DNA of 63,268 nucleotides, the filler included, from Octopus bimaculoides (lineage: Eukaryota): the NCBI RefSeq assembly GCF_001194135.2. It is 5 parts of 4 records of this genome, joined end to end, with 100 filler letters (N's around TTAATTAATTAA, not from the genome) between each part and the next. Parts side by side here need not be neighbours in the genome. Positions count along the whole stretch, not along the records: positions 40,170 to 59,491 come from NC_068982.1; 4 more parts are not named here. One strand, given 5' to 3'. Shown piece after piece: positions 40,126 through 59,491 of the stretch (position 1 is the first letter of the stretch; each line of letters begins with the position of its first letter). Position numbers and translations under genes: made by a program. Below the pieces are notes generated by a model, which saw only the letters and a program-made list of their open reading frames with translations, was not told the DNA's origin and searched no databases.

Positions 40126-40903
40126 NNNNNNNNNNNNNNNNNNNNNNNNNNNNNNNNNNNNNNNNNNNNTATCTATCTATCTATCTATCTATAAATATAT
40201 ATATATATGTATATATATATGTATGTATGTATCTACGTATGTATGTACCTATGTATGCGACTGTGAGTGTATATGTATGTCTGCATATATATTAATTAAA
40301 GTTTCGTGATTAACCGAGTTAAGTTTCCATTTAATGATTTTATCAAATGAATCATTCAATAAGACAGTTCGAAGCACACATGTCTGTCACGAAATAAATA
40401 AACAGATATGAATACTCAGTGATCGCTGTATCTTCAGGCGTTTGCTCGATAGCGATCTTCCAAATATGTATGCGTGCGCGCGTGATCTCTCTTGTGTGTC
40501 TGAAAACGAAAAAGAGATTTCATTACATTCTGTAACGTTTATATCTGTAGTTAAGTTATGTGTGTGTGTATATATGTGTGTGCGTGCGTGTATATATATA
40601 TATATTCAAATATTAATTCGAAGCAGCTCGAGGAATATAAACAAAGTGAAACACGCATACACGATGTGTGTGTTTTGTTAGTATGTGGGGCGACTGCGTC
40701 TTTTTTAGGCGTAAGAGAATATAATCTCAATGCTCTTGGTGGTGTAAAAACACCCGCAAGCAGGTCATAGCCAAATGAGACAACTCACATCACATTCCTT
40801 TTCTTCGGAGCGACAGACATCGATGTTTCGTCATTGCCGCGTAACGAGGAAGGGGTCTAGATGGAATACCTTTTTGTTGTTCTTACCTTAGCGGAACAGT
40901 AAA

Positions 40904-40965
<62 letters not shown>

Positions 40966-42084
40966 NNNNNNNNNNNNNNNNNNNNNNNNNNNNNNNNNNN
41001 NNNNNNNNNNNNNNNNNNNNNNNNNNNNNNNNNNNNNNNNNNNNNNNNNNNNNNNNNNNNNNNNNNNNNNNNNNNNNNNNNNNNNNNNNNNNNNNNNNNN
41101 NNNNNNNNNNNNNNNNNNNNNNNNNNNNNNNNNNNNNNNNNNNNNNNNNNNNNNNNNNNNNNNNNNNNNNNNNNNNNNNNNNNNNNNNNNNNNNNNNNNN
41201 NNNNNNNNNNNNNNNNNNNNNNNNNNNNNNNNNNNNNNNNNNNNNNNNNNNNNNNNNNNNNNNNNNNNNNNNNNNNNNNNNNNNNNNNNNNNNNNNNNNN
41301 NNNNNNNNNNNNNNNNNNNNNNNNNNNNNNNNNNNNNNNNNNNNNNNNNNNNNNNNNNNNNNNNNNNNNNNNNNNNNNNNNNNNNNNNNNNNNNNNNNNN
41401 NNNNNNNNNNNNNNNNNNNNNNNNNNNNNNNNNNNNNNNNNNNNNNNNNNNNNNNNNNNNNNNNNNNNNNNNNNNNNNNNNNNNNNNNNNNNNNNNNNNN
41501 NNNNNNNNNNNNNNNNNNNNNNNNNNNNNNNNNNNNNNNNNNNNNNNNNNNNNNNNNNNNNNNNNNNNNNNNNNNNNNNNNNNNNNNNNNNNNNNNNNNN
41601 NNNNNNNNNNNNNNNNNTATATATATATATATATATGTTGCTGGCAAGGACGCAGTATTTCATTTTGATACCATAGTATACTACCAAATATATTAAAGAT
41701 TTGCAAGTCAATATGTGTCTTACCTTGTGTTAGCAGTGCGGTGTTTTCAGTTTAAAGTTTATCTCTATAGATTTCCTATAGGATTCAGAGCCAGCACTGC
41801 AAGTTACGACGTTTCGTAAACGAATACGTCTAAGTAAACAATGCGATCGGAGACAAGATAGAGAGATTATGGGTATTTTTCTATATATTGCGATCTGAGG
41901 CAAGCTACTGCTATGTCTAGCAGAAGAGTATCCATCATGGAGCATGATCAAATAAGATCGAAATCACTTGGTACGATGGTCTCCGAACTAGAATGCTAAG
42001 GAACTCTTCACCCTGCTTGCAGAATATATCGTGTGCAAAGAGCACTGAATAACCAGCCGGAGAAGGCGTCTTCGTGGTGATAAA

Positions 42085-42410
42085 GGCGCAGGCGTGGCTG
42101 TGTGGTAAGTAACTTGCTTTCCAACCACGTGGCTCCGGGTTCTGTCCCACTGCGTGGCACCTTCAGCGAGTGTCTTCTACTGTAGGCTCGGGCCCAACAA
42201 TGCATTGTCTGTGGATTTGGAAGGTGGAAACCGAAAGGCCGTCATATCTGTGTGTCTTTGTATCCCCATTGTTTGACAACCGATGTTGGTGGGCTTACAT
42301 CCCCCGTAGCTTAGCAGTAATGCGGTCTATTCATTCGACTAAAAATCCTTCAAGGTGATGCCCCAGCATAGCTGCAGGCTATGACTGAAACAAGTAAAAG
42401 ATAAAAGATA
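42085..42410 (+). mobile_element. SINE family A variant (short central tract, divergent 3' part)
   Basis: Head GGCGCAGGCGTGGCTGTGTGGTAAG; tail ATGACTGAAACAAGTAAAAGATAAAAGATA. Confidence 0.85.
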
Positions 42411-42675
42411 TGCTGGTAATGACTATGAAGCTTCGCCGAAAATGACTTCATCAGTCTGGTTATCTTTAAATGGCTTTTCTGTTCAGTATCTTGTAATGCA
42501 CCGTAGATACATCATCAGTGATATTTCCTGGGGTCATCATGTGTATCGGATCCTTCAACAGTCAGACACTCAGCCAGGTGACCAAGCAAGAATTGATCAA
42601 GCCCTAGCTTGTGTCTACTTTGTACCACCCGTGGTAACACTATTTTCTTGGACTCATATGAAACAAACATTAATA

Positions 42676-42715
<40 letters not shown>

Positions 42716-44154
42716 NNNNNNNNNNNNNNNNNNNNNNNNNNNNNNNNNNNNNNNNNNNNNNNNNNNNNNNNNNNNNNNNNNNNNNNNNNNNNNNNNNNNN
42801 NNNNNNNNNNNNNNNNNNNNNNNNNNNNNNNNNNNNNNNNNNNNNNNNNNNNNNNNNNNNNNNNNNNNNNNNNNNNNNNNNNNNNNNNNNNNNNNNNNNN
42901 NNNNNNNNNNNNNNNNNNNNNNNNNNNNNNNNNNNNNNNNNNNNNNNNNNNNNNNNNNNNNNNNNNNNNNNNNNNNNNNNNNNNNNNNNNNNNNNNNNNN
43001 NNNNNNNNNNNNNNNNNNNNNNNNNNNNNNNNNNNNNNNNNNNNNNNNNNNNNNNNNNNNNNNNNNNNNNNNNNNNNNNNNNNNATATATATATATATAT
43101 ATATATACATATATATATGCGTGCTTACATCTGAAAACTAGTGAATAAATACGCATACAGAAAGGATATATGCATGCTTATATAAATAAAAACCATATCT
43201 AAGATGTTTTATATACGTATATACATATACATATATATACATATACATATTTATATATATATATATGTATATACATACATACATACATACATATATATAT
43301 CCATACACAGACATATATATATATATATAAAGGCGTGTCTGTATAATTGGATGTGTGTGTGTGTTTAAATATGCTTACGTGTTTGTGATTGTGTGTGTGT
43401 ATGTGTGTTTACGTATGTCTGTGTCAGTGCTTGGCATTCCGTCTTTAAATCATCCTGTTATATCCGGTCGAGGTTAAAGGTGAACCTTTGAAGTTAGCCG
43501 AAACATTGTCAACAACAATAGTGATTGTAATGACATTAAATGACATTGGAGGTGGGTAGGAGGAAGAGATGATTGGGTTGTGCGAGGTAGTAGTATTGGT
43601 TGGGGTGGTGGTGGCGGCGGCGGTGGTGGTGGTGGTGGTGGTGGTATTTGTGATGGTAGTGGTGGTGGTGAGAGGAAGGCGTGCAGACCAGTAAGTAGAT
43701 GAGAATGACGTGTGGAAATTTATGTATAGCTTGTCTTTCAAGCCTGTCTGTCTGCTTGTCTGTCTATGTTACGAGTCTGTCTATCTGTCCGTCCGTCTGT
43801 CTAGCCGTCTATCAGAACACACACATGTACAAACACGCGTGCGTACTCACATTTGTACATACACATATGCATGTTTTATCCATATGCTCGCGCGCGCGCG
43901 TGCGTTTGTCCACCTGTCTGGCACTACTCTACAACGTGATGAAGAGCTCAATGAAGTTATCACGCTACTCTTATTGATATCGATCAAACAAATGAAAGCA
44001 ATAATCTCGAAATATATCTATGTGTTGTATATATTTTATAGAAGTCGCTGCTGTGTGCAGAATCAACTCAAATCTGATCTTGCAAAACCTCAGTTCGAAG
44101 CATTTTCTTTAAGACGTGAATATCTCATCTTTTCATTTGATATATTTGTATATA

Positions 44155-44398
44155 GTTTGTTGTTGTTGTTGTTGTTGGCACTCCGTCGCTTACGACGTCG
44201 AGGGCTCCAGTTGATCCGATCAACGGAACAGCCTGCTCGTGAAATTAACGTGGAAGTGGCTGAGCACTCCACAGACACGTGTACCCTTAACGCAGTTCTC
44301 GGAGATATTCATTCAGCGTGACAAGGCTGACCCTTTGAATTACAGGCACAACAGAAACAGAAAGTAAGTGTGAGAGAAAGTTGTGGCGAAAGAGTACA
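44155..44398 (-). mobile_element. SINE family C 3' portion with (AAC)n tail
   Basis: (TTG)n then GGCACTCCGTCG...GATCCGATCAACGGAACAGCCTGCTCGTGAAATTAACG; homologous to 10610-10760; 5' part lost in a gap. Confidence 0.75.
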
Positions 44399-45123
44399 NN
44401 NNNNNNNNNNNNNNNNNNNNNNNNNNNNNNNNNNNNNNNNNNNNNNNNNNNNNNNNNNNNNNNNNNNNNNNNNNNNNNNNNNNNNNNNNNNNNNNNNNNN
44501 NNNNNNNNNNNNNNNNNNNNNNNNNNNNNNNNNNNNNNNNNNNNNNNNNNNNNNNNNNNNNNNNNNNNNNNNNNNNNNNNNNNNNNNNNNNNNNNNNNNN
44601 NNNNNNNNNNNNNNNNNNNNNNNNNNNNNNNNNNNNNNNNNNNNNNNNNNNNNNNNNNNNNNNNNNNNNNNNNNNNNNNNNNNNNNNNNNNNNNNNNNNN
44701 NNNNNNNNNNNNNNNNNNNNNNNNNNNNNNNNNNNNNNNNNNNNNNNNNNNNNNNNNNNNNNNNNNNNNNNNNNNNNNNNNNNNNNNNNNNNNNNNNNNN
44801 NNNNNNNNNNNNNNNNNNNNNNNNNNNNNNNNNNNNNNNNNNNNNNNNNNNNNNNNNNNNNNNNNNNNNNNNNNNNNNNNNNNNNNNNNNNNNNNNNNNN
44901 NNNNNNNNNNNNNNNNNNNNNNNNNNNNNNNNNNNNNNNNNNNNNNNNNNNNNNNNNNNNNNNNNNNNNNNNNNNNNNNNNNNNNNNNNNNNNNNNNNNN
45001 NNNNNNNNNNNNNNNNNNNNNNNNNNNNNNNNNNNNNNNNNNNNNNNNNNNNNNNNNNNNNNNNNNNNNNNNNNNNNNNNNNNNNNNNNNNNNNNNNNNN
45101 NNNNNNNNNNNNNNNNNNNNNNN

Positions 45124-45485
45124 CATGGTTCCGGGTTCATTCCCACTGTGTGGCACCTTGGGCAAGTGTCTTCTACTATAGCCTCGGGCCGACCAAAGCC
45201 TTGTGAGTGGATTTAGTAGACGGAAACTGAAAGAAGCTTGTCATATATATGTATATGTATATATATGTGTGTGTGTGTATGTGTTTGTCCCCCCCCCCAA
45301 CATCGCTTAAGAACCGATGCTGGTGTGTTTACGTCCCCGTAACTTAGCGGTTCGGCAAAAGAGACCGATAGAATAAGTACTAGACTTACAAAGAATAAGT
45401 CCTGGGGTCAATTTTCTCGACTAAAGGTGGTGCTCCAGCATGGCCGCAGTCAAATGACTGAAACAAGTAAAAGAGTAAAAGAGTA
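45124..45485 (+). mobile_element. SINE family A (5' end in gap)
   Basis: High identity to 3200-3605. Confidence 0.9.
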
Positions 45486-45754
45486 TAGCAACAAAAAAGT
45501 GAATGTGAATATCTTATCACTCTTTAGATATGGTAGTGTATGTGCTACAACCTTGGTTATGTCGTGTGTGTGTGTGTGTGTGTATGTGTCCTTAAATGAA
45601 AGTATAGCTTATTTACTGATAGTGTGATGGTTTATAGATCAGAGCTTATAAGAATGGAGATTCTGACAGCACGGCGGTGCTGAGCCTTGAGAACTAAGAT
45701 TGTGGTTTGACTATTTTGAGAGAACTGACCTTGTAGCAAGAGACAGAAACGAAC

Positions 45755-45898
45755 CATTAGCGTAGATAGAGTGTGTGCCGCCCGGGGCAGCCCTTCCGTT
45801 TGCCGTCCCCAGACCCCACAAAAAAACACATATTGCCTACAGCAGACCCAAAAGTGGTGCCGCTTTAAAACTACCGCCCCACCCTAGCTACGCTAGTG
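45755..45898. mobile_element. hAT-type MITE (~144 bp) with exact 8-bp TSD
   Basis: 19-bp TIRs CATTAGCGTAGATAGAGTG / CACCCTAGCTACGCTAGTG (16/19), CA...TG ends, TSD AAACGAAC on both sides. Confidence 0.9.
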
Positions 45899-47633
45899 AA
45901 ACGAACCTAACATATTCTAATTACCTAGTCAATGGCATGAGCTAATCACACGCACATCGCACGTTGTTCTAATTATCCACTGATCAGCTTGCAGTCATAT
46001 CATGGAACATATTTGCAAACCAATTCTTTCCGGAATGTCGAGCCTAGTTAGTCATTTATACTGAGCTCGACGTCTAATCTCGCTGCATTACCACCCGCAG
46101 CCGAAACAGTAACTGCAAACAACACACCAGTGAACCTCCGAATATGGCAACATACTTTGACAGCGCGACAACCTTTTTGGAGTTTGAAAGCAGCTTTTGT
46201 GTTGTCCATAAACCTCTGAAGATATGGTATTGCAGATTGGTTTTCATAAGATCTGTTGTGTTCTATGTTGTTATATCAGACTAAGTTGTCATGTTACTTT
46301 TATGGCTTTTTTTTTTATCTATTCTGTTTGGCTGCGTTCTGTGGAAATTCAAAAAAAAAAAAATTTAATTTGGTGTATTGATGTAATTTTCTACGCTGAA
46401 TCTCAGGATTTCTAGAAATATATTTGACAAAAAAGTTATTGAGGTTTAAATTCTCATAATTTTTACCCAGTCAGAAAACAGGATTTGGAAGCTGTCATTT
46501 TGTGTGTGACTGCACGAACTGTCAACATTCGGAAAATAGCACGTGTTTTGATATGAAACTGTAAACAAATCAAATTCTACTTTACGCGCGACATAACTTT
46601 TTTATGTTTTGGAATTTTCAGAAATGCCTTGCGAATTTGTATTTTATACACGGGAATTTATACGATTATGCATAAACCAAAAAAAAAAATTTGGTTGGGG
46701 CGTAATTTTAGGCCCGTTTAGCTGTTACTTGTAGCACATCCCATGACTAGGGTACAAGCTACAGATGGGCACAAGCAGCAGCAGAACACAACGTCAACGC
46801 ACATGCTTTCGCGTAGATTCTATGCAGAGGCAATCTGCAGCCCTCGACATGTTGTGCGGCCCTCGACGAGTTTCCAGGTTACTAATATGCAAGCATAACC
46901 TAAGAGTAGCAACATCTCAAATTCTATCTAATATTGAAAAGATGGTAAAGAATGTGAATGCACAAAAATCTCATTGACACAGATAATGAAATTTGTTCTT
47001 TAATAGAATATCAATGAATTTTCTTCTTGTTTTTTTTTTTTACCTTAATATTTTAAACTATAATTTATTTACACTGGTAATCATCATTAAAAGAAAGAGT
47101 TGCCAGCTTAATGGAAACTTTCATACTAAGACTAACATATTCAAAACGCTATTTCCGAAAATTGTCTCCGTTTTCTTTGAGCATACAAAAGATAAATTTA
47201 GGTGGAGCAAAATGAATAAGACAAAATAATGATGAAAACAGACTCGTACACATCAACATCCTATTAATGACTTGTAGGGATGCGGTATTTCGTTATGCGA
47301 CAATAATGTACTATAAAGTATAGACATCAGAAAGATCAGAAGAGCAGCAAAAATTTAAAATATCTTGGGCAAATGAAAGAAAAAGGATCATGGCAAAATA
47401 GCACATCATATGATATAAACGAAAGTCGATTAAATCTAAAGCCCCAGCATAAAATAGTCTCTTAAGCTTCATCACTATCTGCTGGTATGCCCCCCTTCCT
47501 GATATATTCACGCATCACGCAGTTAAAGATAAGAAATTATTGAGATTAGTCGTTACTCGTTTTGCCCCACTTCATACTTGTGTTTTTAAATTGAAGATCA
47601 AATATTAGTGCGTGTGTTTAGCTAGATAGGTGT

Positions 47634-48062
47634 TCTAACAAAACATCCACGTTTAAGTGGGGTTAAATATTATTTTTTTCGGTATCAATACTGCCTCTGT
47701 CGCTAATGAATATTTTTAACAAGCTCACTGGTTAATGGCGACACTAGCGCCTGTTCTGGCACTGTTTTCCTATATATATATCGCAGACGGAGCGATGAGC
47801 CACTGCTATCTCTAGTGCTCGAGCGTCCATTATTGACAGGGAACGTCGAGATCAATCACGTGATCTGGTGGGTTCGGCGCTGGAGATGGTGGGGATTTAT
47901 CTCTCCGTTAGCGATATAAACAAGCGTGCATTTTGCACTAGAAGCCGATATGAGAGTTGCTCTCACGGTATCTACCGCAGTATAGTTTGTTCTAAGAGAA
48001 CATCCACGTTTAGGTGGGGATAAATATTACCTCTCGGCATTAATACAGCCTCTCACGCTAAT
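47634..48062. mobile_element. Second, rearranged copy of the 4688-5092 foldback family
   Basis: Core 47745-47890 is the reverse complement of ~4808-4950; full arm at 47890-48062; the outer arm end is repeated in direct orientation at 47634-47706. Confidence 0.8.
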
Positions 48063-48085
48063 ATATATTTTAAAGAAAGTTTTTA

Positions 48086-48509
48086 AGCGATCTTTCGATA
48101 CCAGTCCGAAATATCGGCCTTTTCCGTAAAAAGTGTCTTCGGCGATCTTTACCAAAGATCGGCCTTTTCCGTAACACACGCACGATCTTCACTAGGGTGT
48201 TAGGGTTAGGGTTTTAGTGTCAGGGTTAGGGTTAGGGTTAGTGTTTAGGGTTAGGGTAACGGTTAGGGACGGAATTCCCTAAAACCCAAACCCTAACCCT
48301 AAAACCCTAACCCTAACCCTTCAAACCCTTACCCTAACCCTAAACCCTTCAAAAGAAATCGCGCTCTCTGTATCTCTTTCGCTTATACGACGTCGTTTCC
48401 CTCTTTCCCTCCAACACTTTTTACGGGAAAGGCCGATCTATGGTAAAGATCGCCGAAGACACTTTTTACGGAAAAAGCCGATATTTCGGACTGGTATCGA
48501 AAGATCGCC
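48086..48509. mobile_element. Young non-autonomous TIR transposon carrying inverted telomeric arrays
   Basis: 88-bp TIRs 48087-48174 / 48421-48508 with 3 mismatches; exact 8-bp TSD AGTTTTTA (48078-48085, 48510-48517). Confidence 0.95.
48193..48348. repeat. Head-to-head interstitial telomeric arrays (TTAGGG)n-(CCCTAA)n
   Basis: G-rich array 48193-48268 (9 GGG runs), spacer ACGGAATT, C-rich array 48277-48348; both degenerate. Confidence 0.95.
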
Positions 48510-48554
48510 AGTTTTTATATCATAAATCAGCTGAATGAAGGTTGATTTGGAGTT

Positions 48555-48625
48555 AAAAAGTTGTATGGTCACTGCTAGGATACCTTCGATCAGAGGCTGG
48601 CTTGGTGTTAAACATCAAAAACAAC
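48555..48625 (-). repeat. Short interspersed repeat family D
   Basis: ATGGTCAC...GATCAGAGGCTGGCTTGGTGTTAAACA is similar to the reverse complement of 57224-57303. Confidence 0.5.
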
Positions 48626-48824
48626 AGCAATACGTACGTTGACTGGGTGGCAAATCTTAAAAGTAGCTGCTCAGGATAACAGAAAGATAGCTGAATCGAA
48701 TAGATCTGGTTAGAAGATGTGCCGCAGTTAGTTCAAACAATCTATAGCTGTTGTCAATCATAACGAAAGGAATAAAGAAGAAGAAACATCTCTGGTAGAT
48801 TATTGCAACGTGTGGATCTAGTTC

Positions 48825-49117
48825 AAAACGGGGGCACCAGTATTTTCTTAACGAAACACTTTGAAACTTGGGACACTGGTAGAATGTGTCATATAAAACA
48901 TCTTTTTCTCTTAGTCTTCTTAAGAAAAATTATTATATTGCAATTTATTTCATGTTAAAGTTGTCGTATTTCTGTAATTTCAACCAATGACTGACGTCCA
49001 TTCAGCCGTAAAAATTTAGTGCTGACTACGTAAACAAACGATTCTCAAACGATTCTGGCGGTGATAAAATTATTATTTCCTTGTCAAAAAATGGCTGAAG
49101 CATATTGGCAGTAGCTA
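48825..49117. repeat. Probable DNA-transposon-derived interspersed repeat fragment
   Basis: Recalled as a common octopus repeat (AACGAAACACTTTGAAACTT...TTCAACCAATGACTGACGTCCATTCAGC); no second copy or TIR pair in the window. Confidence 0.35.
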
Positions 49118-49121
49118 ATAA

Positions 49122-49165
49122 ACCTTTCTATTATAGGCACAAGGCCTGGTTTTTGAGGGAAGGAG
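49122..49165 (-). mobile_element. SINE family B 3' end running into a gap
   Basis: CCTTTCTATTATAGGCACAAGGCCTG matches the 3' ends at 57527 and 57750. Confidence 0.7.
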
Positions 49166-50493
49166 NNNNNNNNNNNNNNNNNNNNNNNNNNNNNNNNNNN
49201 NNNNNNNNNNNNNNNNNNNNNNNNNNNNNNNNNNNNNNNNNNNNNNNNNNNNNNNNNNNNNNNNNNNNNNNNNNNNNNNNNNNNNNNNNNNNNNNNNNNN
49301 NNNNNNNNNNNNNNNNNNNNNNNNNNNNNNNNNNNNNNNNNNNNNNNNNNNNNNNNNNNNNNNNNNNNNNNNNNNNNNNNNNNNNNNNNNNNNNNNNNNN
49401 NNNNNNNNNNNNNNNNNNNNNNNNNNNNNNNNNNNNNNNNNNNNNNNNNNNNNNNNNNNNNNNNNNNNNNNNNNNNNNNNNNNNNNNNNNNNNNNNNNNN
49501 NNNNNNNNNNNNNNNNNNNNNNNNNNNNNNNNNNNNNNNNNNNNNNNNNNNNNNNNNNNNNNNNNNNNNNNNNNNNNNNNNNNNNNNNNNNNNNNNNNNN
49601 NNNNNNNNNNNNNNNNNNNNNNNNNNNNNNNNNNNNNNNNNNNNNNNNNNNNNNNNNNNNNNNNNNNNNNNNNNNNNNNNNNNNNNNNNNNNNNNNNNNN
49701 NNNNNNNNNNNNNNNNNNNNNNNNNNNNNNNNNNNNNNNNNNNNNNNNNNNNNNNNNNNNNNNNNNNNNNNNNNNNNNNNNNNNNNNNNNNNNNNNNNNN
49801 NNNNNNNNNNNNNNNNNNNNNNNNNNNNNNNNNNNNNNNNNNNNNNNNNNNNNNNNNNNNNNNNNNNNNNNNNNNNNNNNNNNNNNNNNNNNNNNNNNNN
49901 NNNNNNNNNNNNNNNNNNNNNNNNNNNNNNNNNNNNNNNNNNNNNNNNNNNNNNNNNNNNNNNNNNNNNNNNNNNNNNNNNNNNNNNNNNNNNNNNNNNN
50001 NNNNNNNNNNNNNNNNNNNNNNNNNNNNNNNNNNNNNNNNNNNNNNNNNNNNNNNNNNNNNNNNNNNNNNNNNNNNNNNNNNNNNNNNNNNNNNNNNNNN
50101 NNNNNNNNNNNNNNNNNNNNNNNNNNNAGAAAGAACATTTTAGAAACAAGATAGAAATGCGAAAAATGGGGCAGAATTTCTGTCAGAGACGTCAACGTTG
50201 ATTTTGTAGAGAAAGAGAGAGAAAAAGCAGAAGCGTTTGTCCGTGTTTGGTGATGCATGACAAGAAATGCTTGAGACATGTCAAGACTGTGGCCTTCCAA
50301 TGCAATTAGATATGATGTGTAGAACTAACTCTATTCAAGGGACACCACTAGAATCAATGGTCGACTTTATATATACAATAGATGGCGCTGGCAGCGGAAG
50401 GATGGCGGCGGTTAGTGCGTGTGTGGGGGGGGATAAGTGGCGGTGGGTAGGTGGTGGTGGTGAGGTATCACTTTGCGTTGTAGAAGTTGAGAA

Positions 50494-50524
<31 letters not shown>

Positions 50525-51143
50525 ATATTCATAGAGTTAGCATGAGGAGGATCTGATTTCTTATTGGTTTTTCTGTATAACTATTTCGTCATTGGTGTTG
50601 TTGTTATTGTAAGAGATGAGTTCTGTGAAGTTGTTGTTAGTGGTAGTGGGGATGTTTTGAGGTTAGTGACAAACTAATACACACACACACATACTTATAT
50701 AAATATACTACATATAAATACTTATATAAAAACTATATATAAACATAAAACTACTTACACATACACATTAAAATCACACGTATATGAATGAGCACCAAGT
50801 AATATATGCATATACAGTCATATATACTTATAGAGATATATACTAAAACATACATACATATGCGTACGTACATACATATATATATATATATATATATACA
50901 TACATACATATGCGTACGTACATACATACATATATATANNNNNNNNNNNNNNNNNNNNNNNNNNNNNNNNNNNNNNNNNNNNNNNNNNNNNNNNNNNNNN
51001 NNNNNNNNNNNNNNNNNNNNNNNNNNNNNNNNNNNNNNNNNNNNNNNNNNNNNNNNNNNNNNNNNNNNNNNNNNNNNNNNNNNNNNNNNNNNNNNNNNNN
51101 NNNNNNNNNNNNNNNNNNNNNNNNNNNNNNNNNNNNNNATATA

Positions 51144-51180
<37 letters not shown>

Positions 51181-52222
51181 GCACACACATTTGCACATCT
51201 AATAAAACAGATGATACTGAAAATCGCCACTCATGTATGCGCGCGTGTTTGTGTGTGTGTGCGTACGAATGTGTGCATATGCTTTTTGGCTTGTTCGTCT
51301 CTGTGCTTATGAGTTTGAATCAACAACACCGTTTAATACAAGACGAGTGTTGCGGCAAAATGGTAAATTAGCCAATCGGTAAAATGGAGAATAGATAAAA
51401 TTATCGTTCAAAGCCTGCCAGGGCACCTTTATCAGTTCTATGAAGATCATTGTGCCGCCTACATCTTTTATAACACTTGAACTACCTGGAAGAAAGAGAC
51501 AGAATGGGACTGGAAATAGTTGTTATAGAGAAAACATCAAGGGACAGTAGGAATTGGACTGTTGTGTGGTAGGGCTAACGGAAAGCCTTTGATATACCTC
51601 ATGAGTGGATCATCAAAGCAATACAATTAACCCGTTCGACAACTACCGATAGCCACTGTCCAATATCTAATCAAGACTTTGTACCCTATTTTACTTTTCG
51701 GTACTGCTCATTGTCCTCGTGTTAAATTTGCTTTTTGAAGCCGTTCTTCTGTTAATAAAAGATGATATGGATAGCAAAACAATAGCATGAATCCAGAAAT
51801 ATCCGGCATCTTTATAGATGGCATGAAGTTATTTTGACTAAGTATTAGTCTTATTAGAAAGCAGCTCATAACCTAATATTTCACAGTTATTTGAATGAAA
51901 TTTGGTGAGTTCAAATGAGTAAATTTATTATGGAAAAGCGAGGAAAACCTATGTTCTGCTCCGCCAATGTAAACATGAGTAGTTTCGCAGTCAATTGGTG
52001 CGTTCGACTGCGAACAAATTTTGTGGGCAGGCTCAAAATGCCAGGTGTGAAAGGAACATTAATAGAAATAGGGCGAAAACGTTAAGGTCTCAAGAGGATA
52101 AAGAAAATATGGTTATCGCTCATTATACCTTTCGTTGGCCTACTAAATTCACTACAAGAGCTCATAATGAAGTGGAACTTGTAACTTGGAAACTGCTCAG
52201 TAGTACTGGAAATTTTAATATT

Positions 52223-52509
52223 GGTTTCAAATTTTGGCACAAATCTAGTAATTTCAGGAGAGGAGCTAAATCGCTTACATTGGTGTTCAACTGGTACTTT
52301 ATTTTATCGACCCCGAAAGGATGAAAGGCAAAGTCGACCTCGGCGAAATTTGAACTCAGAACGTTAACACGGACGAAATGCTGCTAAGCATTCTCCAGCG
52401 TGCTAACAGTTCTATCAGCTCACCGCCTCATCTTTTCTTCCAGGTATCGAGCTCACGACCTTAGGAACCTGAGCCGAATACTCTAAGCACTAAGCAACGC
52501 GCCCGAGTA
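52223..52509 (-). mobile_element. Chimeric SINE: tRNA-like head fused to a family-B SINE, bounded by a 19-bp direct repeat
   Basis: tRNA-like head 52504-52440, family-B body 52427-52223; TACTGGAAATTTT(A/G)ATATT at 52204-52222 and 52510-52528. Confidence 0.75.
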
Positions 52510-52684
52510 TACTGGAAATTTTGATATTAACAGCGCAGATGGTAATTCTGGAGCAATATCTCCCAACCGACTAAAAAGGACAGCAACTATCTCGATCGAG
52601 ATTGCAATCACGAAACTAAAAACAAAGAACTTGAAGAGAAGCATGATATAAAAGCTGACATAGATTTCTCTTCGAGGAATATTC

Positions 52685-52760
52685 TTTTCTACTCTAGGCG
52701 CAAGGCCCGAAATTTTGGGGGAAGGAGCCAGTCGACTAGATCGACTCCAGTACGCAACTG
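52685..52760 (-). mobile_element. SINE family B 3' fragment (5'-truncated)
   Basis: TTTCTACTCTAGGCGCAAGGCCCGAAATTTTGGGGGAAGG matches 57527-57570. Confidence 0.8.
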
Positions 52761-54655
52761 AAGAACACAGCGGTACGCTCTACCAAAGAATTGCAACCGC
52801 TCTTGCCTTTGGCGATGCTTTCCTTGTGACTTTACAACCGAGGAAACTATGCAAGTATTAGTATTTCATTACCGCAGATACGCATGATACTACGAAAGTT
52901 TTGCCGTTTGTTTGTCGTTCCAAGAAGCTTGAATCTTGACATTGATTTTAGTAAGTAGAGGTTCACTGGACGATCCGCCTGACTCTCATCTTTGACTGCC
53001 GAATCATTGAGAAGGCGGAGCAAGGCGACTGGAAGTATAGCAAGATGCAATGTGACAACCAAATCTACCTACGTGTCTTACCGTGCTCTGAGGTACGTGT
53101 CATACAGAGACGTTCTAGGTATAGCGTTTTTGCGCGTTCAAACGACTATCAATGGTAACGTTTATTCCATACATTACAGAGGAAATCCAGGCTTCACATG
53201 TGTAGGGTACACCAAAGCCTTAAAGAATTTTACCGAGAATTTAAAACTTGCCAGCCGCCCTCGACTTAATTTAGACTACCAGCTGCTTAAAAGGTGACTC
53301 CAGATGCAGAGAGTTTGAAGAGCAACAACTGAGATGAAAGGGAATTGACAATGCTCCTTAGTAAAGGTGTTCTCTCCCGGACATTTTACACTTCCTGAAA
53401 TAGAGTATGAAAGCAAAATAAAAATAACTAATAAGAAATTACAGCAAACATATGGAGATCGTTGAATCAAAAGAATGTTGGTGGAACCTATGAATAAAAG
53501 CAGTTATCAAATTTAAACACAATCGACACGCTTAAAAGATTCCAATACCTTCAGACAATACTTGGTCAAATCACTCCAAGAAATAGCAAACGAGCTGCTG
53601 ACTCAAATGTATGTTTCTTTCGATATCTACTTCTTATTCGATTGGGATATGGCGTCTTAAAAGACTTCATCATATGATGCTACAAACTTAGGCAAGCCTG
53701 ATTCAATACTAGTTGAAACTTGAGATTATCTATATTACTTAGTTGCTCTTGTTTCTGAATATATCTCCATATATGGGCTAGAAAATGTAATCTCCTTAAC
53801 GTAGGCCGGAGCATGGAGTTTAAAAACTCGGTGTTATTTAAACTCTACAGTGCTAGATGTGTACATTATATATNNNNNNNNNNNNNNNNNNNNNNNNNNN
53901 ATATGTGTGTGTGTGAGTAAAAATAAATACAAAAAAAGGGTTTTGTATGATCGTGTATAGAGGAATATATTATTTTATTTAAAAGAGTTCCAATTCTGTC
54001 TGTTTTTTTTATGTTTTATTTATATTCTTGTAAAATTAATGTGGGATATAGAATATGGAATATATAATATATAATATAAAAATGGATGGTACAATGAGAT
54101 GAAGTATTGAATGTCCTATTGAATATATGAAATATGTCTTATTGGATTATGAAATATTGAGTGTTCAATATAAAGAATTAAATATATAAAGGCTAGGGCT
54201 AGGAAATAAACTTCTTACCACACAGCCGCGACTGCACACACATGTTTGTATGTATGTGAGTGAGTGTGTATACATGTGTGTGTGTGTATGTGTGTGTAGT
54301 ATAGAATAAGTATGAAGCTGATAGCTGGATGTTGAAAGTATTTAAAATGCATATGGCTCTCATTGTCCCCAGATGTCACGTCAGCGACATTTCTGTCACA
54401 GTTGTAACAGGGCATGACAAGGTTGTCACGAAACACAGACATCATTGGCCCATCCATCTGTCTACCAGCTGCCTGATATTTGGTGCCTGTTAATGCATGA
54501 TATAACAACGGTAAGGCATATAAATGCAAAAAAAGAAAATAGATAGCTAGATAAAGGGATAAAGAGAGAGAAAGATAGATAAATATATGTGCATGTATGC
54601 ATGCACACACACATATACGTGTGTGTGTGTATTTGTAAGTTTCTCTCTCTCTCTC

Positions 54656-54688
<33 letters not shown>

Positions 54689-54698
54689 NNNNNNNNNN

Positions 54699-54737
<39 letters not shown>

Positions 54738-54815
54738 AAAGGATTTTCAACCCAATGTTTACATACTATTATTTATAGCTTTATATGTACTTCGAGAACC
54801 AATTCCAAAACAAGA

Positions 54816-54851
<36 letters not shown>

Positions 54852-55710
54852 TATACGTATGTATATAATCACCTAAATACAAATATACGTACATGCACAT
54901 TAATTTATATACATGCATACATTACATGTGCGCGCGTGCGCGCGTACGTATGTATGTGTGTGTGTAGGGAACATTCTTTTAAAACCTTATTATATTATAA
55001 ATACAAGTGTTTCAGGTTTATGTATCAAGAAATGAATGTATGCATCTACGATTTAGAACTCAAAACCTTCTCGTCAATGTGAAACCGCAATCCAGCAAAC
55101 CACAGAACATATTTCAAGTAACCAACGTATAAAATACAAATCTCAATGTAAACATGAAAGTAAAAAATTTTATGACACACACTGTGACGTGGGCTCACGT
55201 TGGTTGACTGTGCATTTATAACAAGGAGCTAGTGCACATAATATTACAGACAGCAAAACAAAACTAAGAAAAATATTCGCTCATAACACTTATTATCTAA
55301 TATTAAAAAAATCTCGCAAAATCTAGCTATAGAAGATGTATGATATGATGGTAGCTAAATCAAAAGTGCAGACAGATTTCTATCATTTCTTAAAAGGAAT
55401 GCTTGAAAATTGCAAACTGTAATGCATGAAAATTGAGGCAGTATCGAAAATCCACAAATAAAAGAAGCATTTATTTATCCAGCAATACGGTGTTGCGTAC
55501 TTATTGTCAGTGTTCGTCAGTAATGTGTATATACATATGAATGTGTGTGTGATTGTATGTGTGTATGTTTGTGCGTGTGTGCGCGCACGTGTAAGCATGT
55601 GCATGTACATGTGTGAATCTGCATGACATAGAGATTCGTTTCTCAGACCGGGTGACATGTTGCGTTCTTGAATAAAATACTTTTATTTCATGTTGCTGTA
55701 ATCCACTCAC

Positions 55711-55732
55711 CTGAAATTAGTAACAGCGACAA
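55711..55732 (-). CDS. Candidate 22-nt micro-exon
   Basis: Long pyrimidine tract TTGTTTGTTTTGTTTTTTTTACTTCCAG, donor CAG|GTGAGT; reads LSLLLIS (phase 0 to 1) or VAVTNF. Confidence 0.25.
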
Positions 55733-57223
55733 CTGGAAGTAAAAAAAACAAAACAAACAATAATGATTTGAAAGAAAAGTAAGCCAAGAAATGCGATTAA
55801 CACGGTATTAATTTAACGTTTGAGATGAATATGAAATATTTTAACGTTTCAGATGTTAGTTCTTCAGAAAATATAAAAAAATACGGAGAGGAAACATGGT
55901 GGGGGTGAGGCAGAGAGAATAAAAATGTGTCTGTGTGTAAAAATGTATTAGAATGATAAAATAATTAGAGGGGAAAGAAGACCGGAGATCATAGGGTTTT
56001 TAAATGAGGGAAAATATAGTTTTATGTGAGAGAGTTAAAAGGTAAGGAAGACGGGTGTCAGAGGGTTTGCTTTTGTTTTTTGGATACATGGTAGCGAACT
56101 TTTGGGAGATGGTGCTTGAGTGTTTTTAGAGGAGTGTATTATTTGTTTGTATAGAATGTTCGTAAATTTAATGGCGTTGTTAGTTAGTGTCGAAAACTGA
56201 AGAGACGGGAGAAATACATATAAAAAAAAGAATGAAACTTCTTTGATCTACGCTTGTTTGATCAGGGCTAACCTTGGGCTAACCAATAACAACACATAGC
56301 ACGTATCTCTTCGGTTCAATCTTTATATACAATTAAAGAAGAAATGTTCTAAAATTCCTGTTTTTAACTTACGTTTCTAGATTTAAAAAAATATTTTTAA
56401 ATAAATAATATTTAGGGAGGTGTGTGGTGGTGGTAGTGGTAAAATTGAACTAATTCCAACAAGTTGAAAATGAAATATTTTTGTTAGGAGAGCATAAGAT
56501 ATAACTGGGTATATTAGTATAACCGGTTAAAAAAAAGGGTGGAGTTTGTGTGACATTATTACAGCTTCAGAAATTTGTGTTTGGTATTGATTGTTGTTGT
56601 TGATGGTGGTGTTGTTGTTCTTGTTGCTGTTTTTGTGGTGGGGCTGCTGGTGTTGGTGGTGACGCATTTAGCAATAGCATTCGTTTGTAGCAGGAGAATG
56701 TTGATGGCGCTGATGTGGGGATGGAGGGGTTGGGTGATGTTGATATGTGACGCAGTGGTGAGGCAGGTTAATGATATGGTGGTGGCGGTGTTATTGGTAA
56801 TGTTGGAGTGGTTAGTAGTAGTAGTAGTAGTATAGTGGCGGCGCGGTGGTGGTGGTGGTGGTGGTAGTGGTGCTGATAGTGACAGTGTGATTAAAGCAGG
56901 TGATGGTGGCGGCGGTGATTTTTTTGTCTTTGCTTTTGTTGTTGTTTTTGAGAGTAAAATGTCAACATGGTGAAGAGTCTGTCACATCAAAGGAGATATG
57001 AGAAGGTTGTCACTGCAGATCACAGAGCAAAGTGAAGGGAACGTGGTGAAGGGAGTGGTAGGGTGGGAGTGAGCTGGGTGGTATGACGGGTGGGTGGCAT
57101 TGGTGGAGGGGTGGAGTGGATACTGCTAATAATAATAATACCAGTGATGAGGGTCACAATAAATAGTAACCCTAACCATAATGATGATTTTGATGATGAT
57201 GATGATGATGTTAGTATTTTGTT

Positions 57224-57303
57224 TGTTGTTTAACTCCAGGTCAGCTCTGATGGGACAGACCTATGGCCAAAGACATTCCAACCGTGACCATCCTGTATTT
57301 TTT
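57224..57303 (+). repeat. Short interspersed repeat family D
   Basis: TTGTTTAACTCCAGGTCAGCTCTGAT...CATTCCAACCGTGACCATCC; similar to 59016-59100. Confidence 0.55.
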
Positions 57304-57479
57304 CCAATGTGTGAGGAGAAACCACGAATGCATTATCTAGCGAGCTCTTCTTTTCTAAGGGGATTGTTTTAATTAAGGTAGATTTCGCTGCTATCTCTAA
57401 AATGTTAAGCCACCTTGTAGAGGCTTTCTTCTTTGGCTCGATGATGATGATGATGATGATGATAATGTAACTGAGTTGC

Positions 57480-57526
<47 letters not shown>

Positions 57527-57739
57527 GCCTTTTCTACTCTAGACACAACGCCCGAAATTTTGGGGGAAGGGACCAGTCGATTATAACGATCCCAGTCGCA
57601 ACTGGTACTTAATTTATCGACCCCGAAAGAATGAAAGGCAAAGTCGACCTCGGCGGAATTCGAACTCAGAACGTAAAGACGGACGAAATGCCGCTAAGCA
57701 TTCTGCCCAGCGTGCTAACGATTCTGCCAGCTCGCCGCC
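57527..57739 (-). mobile_element. SINE family B, tandem copy 1
   Basis: Full length, long (ATT)n sense tail. Confidence 0.9.
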
Positions 57740-57749
57740 ATAATAATAA

Positions 57750-57950
57750 CCCTTTCTACTAAAGGCACAAGACCTGAAATTCGGAGGGGGTGGGGATAAA
57801 TCGATTAAATCGACTCCAGTCTTTCACTGGTACTTAATCTATCGACCCCGAAAGGATGAAAGGTAAAAAGTCGACCTTGAACGTAGCGACGGGCGAAATA
57901 CCGCTAAGCATTTCGTCCAGCGTGCTAACGATTCTGCCAAGTTCGCCGCC
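57750..57950 (-). mobile_element. SINE family B, tandem copy 2 (internal deletion)
   Basis: Lacks the B-box segment (GTCGACCTTGAACGTAG). Confidence 0.9.
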
Positions 57951-57966
57951 TAATAACAATGATGAT

Positions 57967-58163
57967 CCTTTTTGCTAAAGGCCTGAATTTTGGGGGACGA
58001 GGTAAGTCGATTAGATCGACCTCAGTACTCAACTGGTACTTGTTTTATCGACCCCGAAAGGATGAAAGGTGAAGGTCACCTCGGCGGAATTTGGACTCAG
58101 AACATAGCGACGGGCGTAACACCGCTAAGCATTTCGTCCAGCGTGCTAACGATTCTACCAGCT
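57967..58163 (-). mobile_element. SINE family B, tandem copy 3
   Basis: Same body; separated from copy 2 by a short AAT/GAT spacer. Confidence 0.9.
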
Positions 58164-59015: not shown

Positions 59016-59100
59016 TCAATCTAAGGTCAACCCTCATTCAGAAATCAGACATAATGGTCAGAGATGTTCCAGCCATGACTATCCCTTCATTTATTTTTTT
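59016..59100 (+). repeat. Short interspersed repeat family D
   Basis: CTAAGGTCAACCCTCAT...TTCCAGCCATGACTATCCC. Confidence 0.5.
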
Positions 59101-59131
59101 TCAAAATTCGTATGTCTATTCTTTTACTATT

Positions 59132-59360
59132 GCACTTGTTTCAGTCATTGGACTACAGCCAAGCCGGCATATCGCCTATTAGTCGAACAAATCGGAACTA
59201 ATGACTAATTTTTATGTTTAATGCCTATTCTAGCGGTAACCACCAGGTCTCAGATTCAGTCCCATATGTAGCATCTTGGACACATATTATTTTCTTTAGC
59301 CTCGGATTGTCCAATACACTGTGAGTGAAATTGGTGCATGGAAACTGTACGGAAGCATTT
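59132..59360. mobile_element. Two degraded SINE A fragments in opposite orientation
   Basis: 59132-59220 is a minus-strand tail; 59240-59360 is a plus-strand head segment. Confidence 0.5.

Positions 59361-59460: not shown

Positions 59461-59491
<31 letters not shown>

What the first reader, a model, noticed from the sequence alone, without database searches (positions are those of the whole stretch)
48086..48509. Young TIR transposon that carries a telomere-fusion-like cassette
Seen: 424-bp element with 88-bp TIRs (85/88 identical), an exact 8-bp TSD AGTTTTTA, and degenerate (TTAGGG)n followed by (CCCTAA)n meeting at the palindrome GGAATTCC. Established: TTAGGG is the ancestral metazoan and general molluscan telomere repeat; (TTAGGG)n-(CCCTAA)n is the signature of end-to-end fusions such as human 2q13; 8-bp TSDs occur with hAT, P and Merlin, and GG...CC termini fit Merlin (the right end is CC, the left reads AG). 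Inference: this is a mobile element, not a fusion scar, that could seed fusion-like interstitial telomeric sites around the genome. A break at the centre would leave both new ends with the G-strand running 5'->3' toward the break, the polarity telomerase extends. It might therefore act as a portable fission/healing site or recruit telomere-binding proteins.
Basis: partly seen in the sequence, partly recalled or inferred. Interest (0 to 1): 0.9.

Follow-up and report, generated by a model that had tools for sequence, protein, structure and literature searches.

The report
Octopus MITE carrying head-to-head telomere repeats
This is a real, recently inserted, non-coding "cut-and-paste" transposon of an octopus genome whose variable middle part happens to be two short, decayed telomere-like repeat arrays facing each other. 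It shows that such "fusion-like" signatures can be carried around by mobile DNA, but nothing indicates a role at telomeres.

Summary
There is a 424-bp element (48086-48509) with 88-nt inverted ends (85/88), an exact 8-bp target duplication AGTTTTTA, and degenerate (TTAGGG)n and (CCCTAA)n arrays meeting at GGAATTCC.

The host is an octopod. I found no second copy of this exact family. I did find a multi-copy sister family in Octopus sinensis and O. vulgaris. It shares the terminal 12-mer (GGCGATGTTTCG against GGCGATCTTTCG), a TTTCCGTAAAAA box and a right subterminal block. Its 8-bp duplication is proven by an uninterrupted paralogous site.

The sister family's core holds (ATAC)n/(CA)n microsatellites, not telomere repeats. 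So the telomere-like arrays fill the variable microsatellite core of a known kind of element, a microsatellite-bearing MITE.

Two unrelated octopus inverted-repeat elements also carry central telomere-like arrays, one of them head-to-head. The most likely origin is telomerase extending both sides of a break in a progenitor copy, a route already published for vertebrates. The arrays were then carried along passively.

Merlin fits the GG ends, end length and 8-bp duplication, but no matching transposase was found. The fission, healing and protein-recruitment ideas are untested speculation. Interest is moderate.

The parts
48078..48085 (.). Left copy of the 8-bp target-site duplication AGTTTTTA
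   Evidence: Read directly. It is identical to 48510-48517. Chance is about 2e-5.
48086..48174 (+). Left terminal inverted repeat. The terminus reads AGCGATCTTTCG. It holds two direct copies of ATCGGCCTTTTCCGTAA, 45 nt apart (48109-48129 and 48154-48174), which are presumed transposase-binding boxes.
   Evidence: Inverted repeat I1 and direct repeat D5. Arm alignment. The terminal 12-mer is 11/12 identical to sister family M2, and the TTTCCGTAAAAA box is shared.
48175..48198 (+). Short left spacer (CACACGCACGATCTTCAC...) between the inverted end and the G-array
   Evidence: Read directly. It has no significant match to the right spacer.
48199..48270 (+). Degenerate (TTAGGG)n array, G-strand 5'->3' towards the centre. 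It is 72 nt long and 86% identical to the pure repeat, with variants TTTTAGTG, TCAGGG, TTAGTG, TTTAGGG and TAACGG.
48271..48278 (.). Junction palindrome GGAATTCC (contains AATT and an EcoRI site), where the two arrays meet with no loop
48279..48348 (+). Degenerate (CCCTAA)n array, with the G-strand on the minus strand pointing to the centre. It is 70 nt long and 86% identical to the pure repeat, with its own variants.
   Evidence: The variant order does not correspond significantly to the left array (494 of 5000 unit shuffles score as well).
48349..48420 (+). Right subterminal region of about 70 nt. It includes the block AAATCGCGCTCTCTGTATCTCTTTCGCT, which is conserved with sister family M2.
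   Evidence: Alignment A3. BLAST hits of this block fall in all M2 copies in L002-L005.
48421..48509 (-). Right terminal inverted repeat. The terminus on the minus strand is GGCGATCTTTCG. It holds two copies of ACACTTTTTACGG(G/A)AA(A/G)GCCGAT (48414-48437 and 48459-48482).
   Evidence: I1 and D4
48510..48517 (.). Right copy of the 8-bp target-site duplication AGTTTTTA

Best explanation
48086-48509 is one copy of a non-autonomous cut-and-paste DNA transposon (a MITE) in an octopus genome.

The group it belongs to is defined here by four features:
- termini 5'-GGCGAT(C/G)TTTCG;
- a TTTCCGTAAAAA box about 35-40 nt inside the ends;
- a conserved right subterminal block;
- 8-bp target-site duplications.

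The element encodes nothing. It must be excised and re-inserted by a transposase supplied in trans, which probably binds the duplicated boxes in each 88-nt end and makes an 8-bp staggered cut at the AT-rich target. The transposase superfamily is not identified. Merlin fits best on structure.

Between the ends, this group carries a variable, microsatellite-rich core. In this lineage the core is two ~70-nt degenerate telomere-like arrays with the G-strands pointing inward.

The most likely origin (inferred, not shown) is a double-strand break in the core of a progenitor copy. Telomerase extended both 3' ends and the ends were joined at the self-complementary AATT. The arrays then decayed and were carried along passively by transposition.

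The arrays make the element a perfect long hairpin. No evidence assigns them a function at telomeres.

Sub-confidences:
- real transposon insertion of this group: about 0.9;
- arrays already present and degenerate before this insertion: about 0.6;
- two-sided telomerase origin: about 0.35;
- Merlin: about 0.35.
For: Insertion signature: the inverted ends match 85/88 and the 8-bp duplication is exact. There is no coding capacity.

Host: the window's repeats hit Octopus loci at 80-90%.

Sister family M2 (O. sinensis L002 10779-11248, with further copies in L003, L004 and L005):
- Its terminal 12-mer is 11/12 identical to ours (P about 2e-6).
- It has the same TTTCCGTAAAAA box and a collinear right subterminal block.
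- Its 8-bp duplication CAAAAGAG/CAGAAGAG flanks an insertion that is absent from the paralogous Merlin gene in L001, which has a single CAAAAGAG.
- Its core is (ATAC)n/(CA)n, which shows that the core is a variable microsatellite compartment.

Age of the arrays: they deviate from the pure repeat in 20 of 142 columns, against 3 of 176 in the inverted ends (Fisher p = 3e-5 with indels, 0.12 with substitutions only). This suggests the decay predates this insertion.

Independent synthesis: the variant patterns of the two arrays are not in register, which fits separate synthesis on the two sides.

Published precedent: head-to-head telomeric stretches occur at 3 of 41 break-repair ITS (interstitial telomeric sequence) loci in vertebrates, attributed to a second telomerase acting on the other side of the break (PMC8537989).

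Recurrence: telomere-like arrays sit at the core of two unrelated octopus inverted-repeat elements. One is L001 5565-6294, head-to-head and G-strands inward. The other is L002 about 7168-7590, unidirectional.

Merlin hallmarks: GG termini, inverted ends of 24-462 bp and 8-9-bp duplications, with 191 Merlin-like proteins in O. bimaculoides (PMC8101967).
Against: - No second copy of this exact family was found, so mobility as a family and the presence of arrays in other copies are untested. The accessible collections hold only about 90 kb of octopus DNA.
- With substitutions only, the difference in decay between arrays and ends is not significant (p = 0.12).
- Microsatellite slippage could inflate the indel count.
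- No telomerase-RNA-derived fragment can be recognised next to the arrays, because the octopus telomerase RNA is not available to me.
- The Merlin elements recovered (L002 9415-11751; L012-L014; L017) have unrelated ends (GGTAC...).
- The left terminus reads AG, not GG.
Confidence: 0.7

Rival explanations
1. Inverted duplication. A progenitor MITE carried a single, one-directional TTAGGG-like microsatellite in its core. Replication stalling or hairpin formation within the G-rich array then caused a fold-back template switch that duplicated the array in inverted orientation. This would give the head-to-head pair with no loop.
For: - The two arrays have nearly equal length (72 and 70 nt) and meet at a perfect 8-nt palindrome.
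- The whole element folds as one hairpin.
- A one-directional telomere-like array inside an inverted-repeat element exists in O. sinensis (L002 7392-7493).
- Foldback-type elements are frequent in the sampled octopus DNA.
Against: - The variant repeats of the two arrays are not in register (494 of 5000 shuffles).
- Each array is closer to pure TTAGGG than to the other (scores 49 and 43 against 34). Any duplication must therefore be old or have started from a pure array.
- The flanking spacers are not inverted copies of each other.
- The right spacer is a family-conserved, one-sided block.
Confidence: 0.25
2. In-situ microsatellite birth. The arrays arose by slippage and expansion from G3/C3-rich proto-motifs already present in the MITE core, without telomerase. 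Their identity with the host telomere motif would be coincidental.
For: - The sister family carries other microsatellites in the same compartment.
- At the position aligned with the outer edge of the C-array it has CCCACACCCCATCAAAC (A3).
- Many variants are T-tract length changes typical of slippage.
- Microsatellite-carrying MITEs are well documented (references in PMC6947457; PMC3879986).
Against: - Two arrays of opposite orientation both converged on the hexamer that is the only experimentally determined cephalopod telomere repeat (PMC13218726).
- The same motif is found in the cores of two unrelated octopus inverted-repeat elements.
- The alignment to the proto-motif is short and weak.
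Confidence: 0.12
3. Captured genuine telomere fusion. A transposon end lay next to a short or healed telomere. Sister-chromatid or end-to-end fusion then created end-(TTAGGG)n-(CCCTAA)n-end, which became mobilisable because it had two inverted ends.
For: The G-strands point to the centre, as in real fusions. There is no loop at the junction, and the arrays are of near-equal length.
Against: - A sister-chromatid fusion would give a fully symmetric element. Here the two sides differ (18-24 nt against about 70 nt of spacer), and the right spacer is a conserved one-sided family block that is also present in the non-palindromic sister family.
- The arrays are only about 70 nt each.
Confidence: 0.05
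4. The element is a portable fission or telomere-healing site, or a recruiter of telomere-binding proteins, and this is selected for or biologically significant.
For: The geometry is right: a central break would expose two G-strand 3' ends. Each array keeps stretches of 2-3 perfect repeats. Reviews state that ITSs can bind telomere proteins and are fragile (PMC12692304; PMC6410037).
Against: - No result here bears on binding, breakage or healing.
- The arrays are short and 14% decayed.
- The equivalent compartment in the sister family holds unrelated microsatellites, so the arrays are not needed for the element.
- Only one copy has been seen.
Confidence: 0.05
5. Assembly or cloning artefact. 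The palindrome centred on an EcoRI site in a gap-rich draft scaffold would be a chimeric join or a palindromic read artefact.
For: The centre contains GAATTC. The piece is a draft scaffold with 7 runs of N.
Against: - The two arms differ by 3 substitutions, have different spacers and have different array variants. Palindromic read artefacts would be near-perfect.
- The unit is framed by an exact 8-bp duplication.
- There is no match to plasmids or vectors.
- A sister family with the same termini exists in two other species' assemblies.
Confidence: 0.02

Closest known systems
Sister MITE family 'M2' of Octopus sinensis and O. vulgaris (named here; L002 10779-11248, L003 4266-4638 and 12494-12980, and the corresponding copies in L004 and L005)
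   Same: Terminal 12-mer GGCGAT(G/C)TTTCG, 11/12 identical. TTTCCGTAAAAA box about 35-40 nt from the end. Collinear right subterminal block. 8-bp target duplication. Size of 424 against 470 bp. Non-coding. Direct subrepeats inside the inverted ends.
   Different: M2 has 44-nt ends, and the rest of its end sequence is unrelated to ours. Its core is (ATAC)n/(CA)n/(CT)n, neither telomere-like nor palindromic. It is multi-copy in the sampled DNA, whereas the window element was seen once.
Merlin superfamily MITEs (IS1016/IS1595-related DDE transposons; Feschotte 2004 as summarised in PMC8101967)
   Same: Inverted ends within the 24-462 bp range. Terminal 5'-GG (right end here, both ends in M2). 8-bp target duplication. 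Merlin is unusually abundant in O. bimaculoides.
   Different: No transposase partner with these ends was found. The octopus and related Merlin elements recovered start GGTAC.... The left terminus here is AG.
Microsatellite- or tandem-repeat-carrying MITEs ((GTCY)n MITEs of Lepidoptera; Xstir in Xenopus; pearl and DTC84 in bivalves)
   Same: A non-autonomous inverted-repeat element acts as a cassette for internal short tandem repeats that hitch-hike with transposition (PMC3879986; reference list of PMC6947457).
   Different: Those elements carry ordinary micro- or minisatellites in one orientation. DTC84 and pearl have an AA duplication and short ends. Here the cargo is the host telomere motif in two opposed arrays.
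Head-to-head short interstitial telomeric sequences made during double-strand-break repair (TERC-ITS loci of mouse lemur and Xenopus, PMC8537989)
   Same: Two short telomeric stretches in head-to-head orientation at an internal site, not derived from chromosome fusion. The proposed mechanism is telomerase acting on both sides of the break.
   Different: Those loci are fixed genomic sites flanked by telomerase-RNA-derived fragments, and the authors found no role for transposons in spreading them. Here the pair lies inside a mobile element, and no telomerase-RNA fragment can be tested.
Fusion ITS such as human 2q13-2q14
   Same: The (TTAGGG)n-(CCCTAA)n head-to-head order (PMC6410037; PMC8537989).
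   Different: A fusion ITS joins two former chromosome ends with subtelomeric flanks. Here the arrays are about 70 nt each and are enclosed within a 424-bp inverted-end and duplication unit.
Foldback elements (Drosophila FB, Tetris) and ciliate telomere-bearing transposons (Oxytricha TBE1, Tetrahymena Tel-1). Tetris is cited in PMC12692304; the rest is from my own knowledge.
   Same: Foldback elements have long inverted arms that contain tandem repeats and fold into a hairpin. In TBE1 and Tel-1, telomeric repeats form part of a transposon's inverted repeats.
   Different: In foldback elements the arms themselves are built of family-specific repeats. In the ciliate elements the telomeric repeats are at the outer termini, not the centre. 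Neither was tested here.

Membership tests
MITE (non-autonomous TIR DNA transposon) | Terminal inverted repeats | tested here: met
   88 nt, 85/88
MITE (non-autonomous TIR DNA transposon) | Target-site duplication of fixed length directly flanking the ends | tested here: met
   Exact AGTTTTTA on both sides. The sister family's 8-bp duplication was verified against an uninterrupted paralogous site.
MITE (non-autonomous TIR DNA transposon) | Small size and no coding capacity | tested here: met
   424 bp. The longest overlapping ORF is 50 aa.
MITE (non-autonomous TIR DNA transposon) | Multiple dispersed copies of the same family | tested here: inconclusive
   No second copy was found in the 19-kb piece or in about 90 kb of octopus loci. 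The public collections that could be scanned lack octopus genomes. Sister family M2 has at least 3 independent copies.
Merlin superfamily | Inverted ends of 24-462 bp (PMC8101967) | tested here: met
   88 nt
Merlin superfamily | Conserved terminal 5'-GG | tested here: inconclusive
   The right end is GG and the left end is AG. Sister family M2 has GG at both ends.
Merlin superfamily | 8- or 9-bp target-site duplication | tested here: met
   8 bp
Merlin superfamily | Autonomous partner with the same ends encoding a DDE_Tnp_IS1595 transposase | tested here: inconclusive
   Eleven fetched loci hold a DDE_Tnp_IS1595 gene (L001-L005, L011-L017 less L015). None has GGCGAT(C/G)TTTCG ends. This is a tiny sample of the 191 Merlin-like proteins reported in O. 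bimaculoides.
hAT superfamily | 8-bp duplication with short (about 10-25 nt) ends beginning YARNG (my own knowledge) | tested here: inconclusive
   The 8-bp duplication is met. The 88-nt ends starting GGCGAT do not fit the usual hAT terminus. The transposase could not be tested.
Fusion ITS (telomere-telomere fusion scar) | Head-to-head (TTAGGG)n-(CCCTAA)n | tested here: met
Fusion ITS (telomere-telomere fusion scar) | Arrays flanked by the two ancestral chromosome-end sequences, not by one mobile unit | tested here: not met
   The arrays are enclosed by inverted ends and an 8-bp duplication within 424 bp.
Telomerase-inserted short ITS at a repaired break | Telomeric repeats present where related 'empty' sequences lack them | tested here: inconclusive
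   The homologous core of the sister family has no telomere-like repeats. That core is otherwise unalignable, so no precise empty site exists.
Telomerase-inserted short ITS at a repaired break | Adjacent fragment copied from telomerase RNA (TERC-ITS subclass) | not testable with these tools
Foldback element (whole-length palindrome) | The two halves are inverted copies over the whole length | tested here: not met
   A global alignment suggested this. However, the spacers are not significantly related, and the array variants are not in register. The right spacer is a one-sided family block.
Bivalve tandem-repeat MITEs (pearl, DTC84) | AA target duplication, core of satellite-like repeats plus a one-sided microsatellite (PMC3879986) | tested here: not met
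   The duplication is 8 bp and the ends are unrelated.

The most novel reading that the evidence does not exclude
In octopus genomes, short interstitial telomere-like arrays, including head-to-head 'fusion-like' pairs, are generated mainly inside inverted-repeat transposons. Their hairpin-prone cores break and are healed by telomerase from both sides. The arrays are then multiplied by transposition. Such elements would be the main source of octopus ITSs. They would form dispersed fragile sites that can seed new telomeres and so influence karyotype change.
Probability: 0.1. Interest if true: 0.75.

Novelty: new variant of a known kind. Interest (0 to 1): 0.42.

Why it matters
Interstitial telomeric repeats, and head-to-head pairs in particular, are routinely read as footprints of chromosome fusions. 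Mollusc genome papers do this too (for example PMC12506671).

[quoted passage not shown] The vertebrate survey found no role for transposons (PMC8537989).

Here a head-to-head pair sits inside an intact unit bounded by inverted ends and a target duplication. This is a concrete case of a fusion-like signature that arrived by transposition.

If the family is numerous, three things follow:
- Fusion calls in cephalopod assemblies need a transposon filter.
- The family offers a natural set of dated copies in which to study how telomere-like arrays arise and decay.
- The copies could be tested for fragility.

As it stands the finding is one copy. The functional ideas are untested.

Tried and rejected
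**Searches for other copies**
1. Exact-pattern scans for 22-26 specified bases of the inverted end found nothing. I ran them in metagenome contigs (twice), genome contigs (twice) and viral contigs. These collections do not hold octopus genomes.
2. I translated the four open frames of the inverted end and searched the 5.8-billion-protein collection for ORFs called across other copies. There was no hit.
3. Exact look-ups of two window ORFs, to locate the source contig or an allelic empty site, found nothing on record.
4. I looked for a paralogous empty site within the piece. A 92-nt direct repeat (47631-47722 and 47988-48077, 80%) ends exactly at the duplication, but the similarity does not continue across the insertion point.

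**Ideas tested and dropped**
5. 'The whole element is an imperfect palindrome with one 46-nt indel'. I rejected this because the spacer similarity is an 11-nt match, the array variants are not in register, and the right spacer is a one-sided block conserved in the non-palindromic sister family.
6. The GCGATATTTCGGTATCG motifs in L005 (18902, 19408, 19860) are internal to a different large palindromic element, not termini of a relative.

**Autonomous partner and more octopus DNA**
7. Search for an autonomous partner. I took an O. bimaculoides Merlin protein from the supplement of PMC8101967 and found homologues. I then used ten look-ups of encoding contigs. No element had matching ends. L006-L010 turned out not to be octopus.
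8. I queried with a LINE ORF2 to harvest more octopus loci. The search returned no usable octopus contigs.

**Negative controls**
9. Rfam and tRNA scans gave only sub-threshold hairpin and microsatellite noise.
10. A check against plasmids and vectors found no match.

**Not run**
11. I skipped a Pfam scan of six-frame translations. The tool refuses translations with stops, and no ORF in the piece looked coding.
Full report
**1. Checking the observation**

The region reads exactly as described. The repeat finder gives arms 48087-48174 and 48421-48508, 88 nt and 97% complementary. A direct comparison gives 85/88 with the outermost bases A and G. AGTTTTTA lies at 48078-48085 and at 48510-48517. 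The chance of an exact 8-nt match at fixed positions is about 2e-5.

Tandem Repeats Finder reports a GTTAGG-period array at 48199-48268 and an AACCCT-period array at 48283-48348. They meet at GGAATTCC, 48271-48278. TTAGGGTTAGGG with up to 1 mismatch occurs ten times in the element and once elsewhere in the window, against 0.01 expected.

Each array is about 86% identical to pure (TTAGGG)n. The element folds as one hairpin, dG -157.8 kcal/mol, z = -27. It has no ORF above 50 aa, no tRNA and no Rfam hit above threshold.

**2. Surroundings and host**

The piece 40170-59491 is a draft scaffold with seven runs of N. It has no convincing coding ORF and many microsatellites. No other copy of the inverted end occurs in it.

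Its dispersed repeats match Octopus bimaculoides, O. sinensis and O. vulgaris DNA at 80-90%. The host is therefore an octopod. TTAGGG is the only experimentally determined cephalopod telomere motif (PMC13218726).

**3. Getting related sequence**

The scannable collections hold no octopus genomes. Pattern scans found nothing, and so did a protein-word trick on the open frames of the inverted end.

I reached octopus DNA indirectly. PMC8101967 reports 191 Merlin-like proteins in O. bimaculoides, and its supplement gave one sequence. Its homologues led to about 90 kb of octopus DNA (L001-L005) through the look-up of encoding contigs.

**4. A sister family**

In O. sinensis (L002) a 470-bp element at 10779-11248 has perfect 44-nt inverted ends beginning GGCGATGTTTCG. 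The window element's end is GGCGATCTTTCG, so 11 of 12 terminal bases are identical (P about 2e-6 for aligned termini).

Both elements carry TTTCCGTAAAAA about 35-40 nt inside the end and direct subrepeats within the ends. The window's right spacer (48349-48420) shares a collinear block with this family, AAATCGC...TCTCTTTCGCT (A3).

The L002 copy interrupts a Merlin transposase ORF. The paralogous uninterrupted gene in L001 has a single CAAAAGAG where L002 has CAAAAGAG|element|CAGAAGAG. This group of elements therefore demonstrably inserts with an 8-bp duplication.

Further copies lie in L003, L004 and L005, giving at least three independent insertions in about 50 kb of non-redundant sequence. 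The core of this sister family is (ATAC)n/(CA)n/(CT)n. It is neither telomere-like nor palindromic.

**5. What this changes**

A global alignment had suggested that the whole window element is an imperfect palindrome with one 46-nt indel. That idea does not hold, for three reasons:
- The spacer similarity is an 11-nt match.
- The order of variant repeats in the two arrays is not in register (494 of 5000 unit shuffles do as well), and each array is closer to pure TTAGGG than to the other.
- The long right spacer is a one-sided, family-conserved block.

The correct anatomy is an asymmetric MITE. It consists of inverted end, short left spacer, variable core, conserved right subterminal block and inverted end. 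In this lineage the core is the pair of opposed telomere-like arrays.

**6. Recurrence of telomere-like arrays in octopus inverted-repeat elements**

Only two other telomere-like arrays occur in the sampled octopus loci. Both sit inside inverted-repeat structures of unrelated sequence.
- L001 5565-6294 (O. bimaculoides) has about 230-nt arms (71-93% complementary). A central G-array of 79 nt is followed by a short C-array, with the G-strands inward again.
- L002 about 7168-7590 has 45-75-nt imperfect inverted repeats around a one-directional array.

A solo arm of the L001 family lies in the window at about 48806-49024, 89% identical, 300 nt from the element. Three of three is suggestive but is a very small sample.

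**7. Mechanism**

Shown:
- The element carries the insertion signature of a cut-and-paste transposon.
- It encodes nothing.
- It belongs to a group with an 8-bp duplication.

Inferred:
- Mobilisation is in trans, by a transposase that binds the duplicated boxes in each end.
- The superfamily is unresolved. Merlin hallmarks (ends of 24-462 bp, terminal GG, 8-9-bp duplication) are met, apart from the left AG.
- However, the Merlin elements I could inspect start GGTAC... and are unrelated to these ends. These are L002 9415-11751, the complete 1,059-bp elements L012-L014, and L017 with ends of at least 93 nt.

For the arrays I favour telomerase extension of both 3' ends of a break in the core of a progenitor copy, with joining at the self-complementary AATT. 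This exact explanation has been published for head-to-head stretches at 3 of 41 break-repair ITS (interstitial telomeric sequence) loci in vertebrates (PMC8537989). It predicts the inward G-strands and independent variant patterns.

The arrays deviate from the pure repeat in 20 of 142 columns, against 3 of 176 for the inverted ends. The difference has p = 3e-5 with indels and 0.12 with substitutions only. They were therefore probably already decayed when this copy inserted, and so were carried by the master copy.

The rival explanations are:
- fold-back duplication of a one-directional array;
- in-situ microsatellite birth;
- capture of a real sister-telomere fusion;
- an assembly artefact (excluded by the differences between the arms, the duplication and the sister family).

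**8. Comparison with what is known**

Microsatellite- and tandem-repeat-bearing MITEs are well known. Examples are the (GTCY)n MITEs, Xstir, and pearl and DTC84 in bivalves. Head-to-head short ITSs from break repair are known. Transposon-mediated spread of ITSs has been suggested but rests on adjacency (PMC6410037).

The combination seen here is a head-to-head telomere-like pair as the core of an intact MITE with inverted ends and a target duplication. It is a new variant of these known kinds, not a new category.

**9. Verdict**

Merlin is plausible but unproven. The functional speculation is untested.

Interest is moderate (0.42). The finding is a useful caution for reading ITSs as fusion marks in cephalopods, and a lead on how such arrays arise. 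But it rests on one copy, and the decisive census needs the octopus assemblies.

Noticed in passing
window 48806-49024; L001 5565-6294: About 300 nt right of the element lies a solo arm of a second, unrelated foldback family (89% identical to L001 6073-6254). The complete O. bimaculoides copy has arms of about 230 nt and its own central head-to-head telomere-like arrays. In the window the similarity stops at 49024, and an assembly gap follows at 49166.
   Followed up: partly
L002 7168-7590 (O. sinensis VCDQ01004827.1): A one-directional degenerate TTAGGG-like array (7392-7493) sits inside a small AT-rich element with imperfect inverted repeats of 45-75 nt. No clear target duplication was seen.
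   Followed up: partly
L002 10779-11248 against L001 3960-4056: A sister-family MITE has inserted into, and disrupted, the 3' end of a Merlin (DDE_Tnp_IS1595) transposase ORF. The paralogous gene in O. bimaculoides serves as the empty site, with a single CAAAAGAG.
   Followed up: yes
window 47631-47722 and 47988-48077: A 92-nt direct repeat (80% identical, 357 nt apart) has its second copy ending exactly at the left target duplication. It is probably part of an older repeat into which the element inserted. It did not provide an empty-site paralogue.
   Followed up: partly
window 45124-45488, 42080-42410, 52250-52760, 57518-58163: Several abundant octopus dispersed repeats are present. A unit of about 365 nt is found 5 or more times in L002, L004 and L005 at about 90%. 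A SINE-like unit of about 210 nt is partly tandem at 57669-58070. Neither was classified.
   Followed up: no
L005 18560-20130 (O. sinensis CM016861.1): A large palindromic or tandem-inverted structure with arms of about 500 nt contains the internal motif GCGATATTTCGGTATCG. The motif superficially resembles the window element's terminus but is not terminal there.
   Followed up: partly
L012-L014 (Logan SRR22455136-140), L017: These are complete 1,059-bp Merlin elements with 29-nt ends GGTACTTCTACAGAACAGCCCACCCATGG and a 299-aa transposase. A further Merlin element has ends of at least 93 nt. The host organisms are unknown.
   Followed up: no
L003 6023-9145, L004 5661-8781, L005 6005-9127: A LINE with an endonuclease and reverse-transcriptase ORF (843 aa, intact in O. 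vulgaris L004) lies next to a 305-aa Merlin gene. The arrangement is the same on two O. sinensis chromosomes and one O. vulgaris chromosome, so this is a duplicated composite block.
   Followed up: no
window 40966-41617, 42716-43084, 44399-45123, 49166-50127, 50939-51138, 53874-53900, 54689-54698: Seven runs of N (assembly gaps), mostly bordered by microsatellites. The piece comes from a short-read draft scaffold.
   Followed up: no
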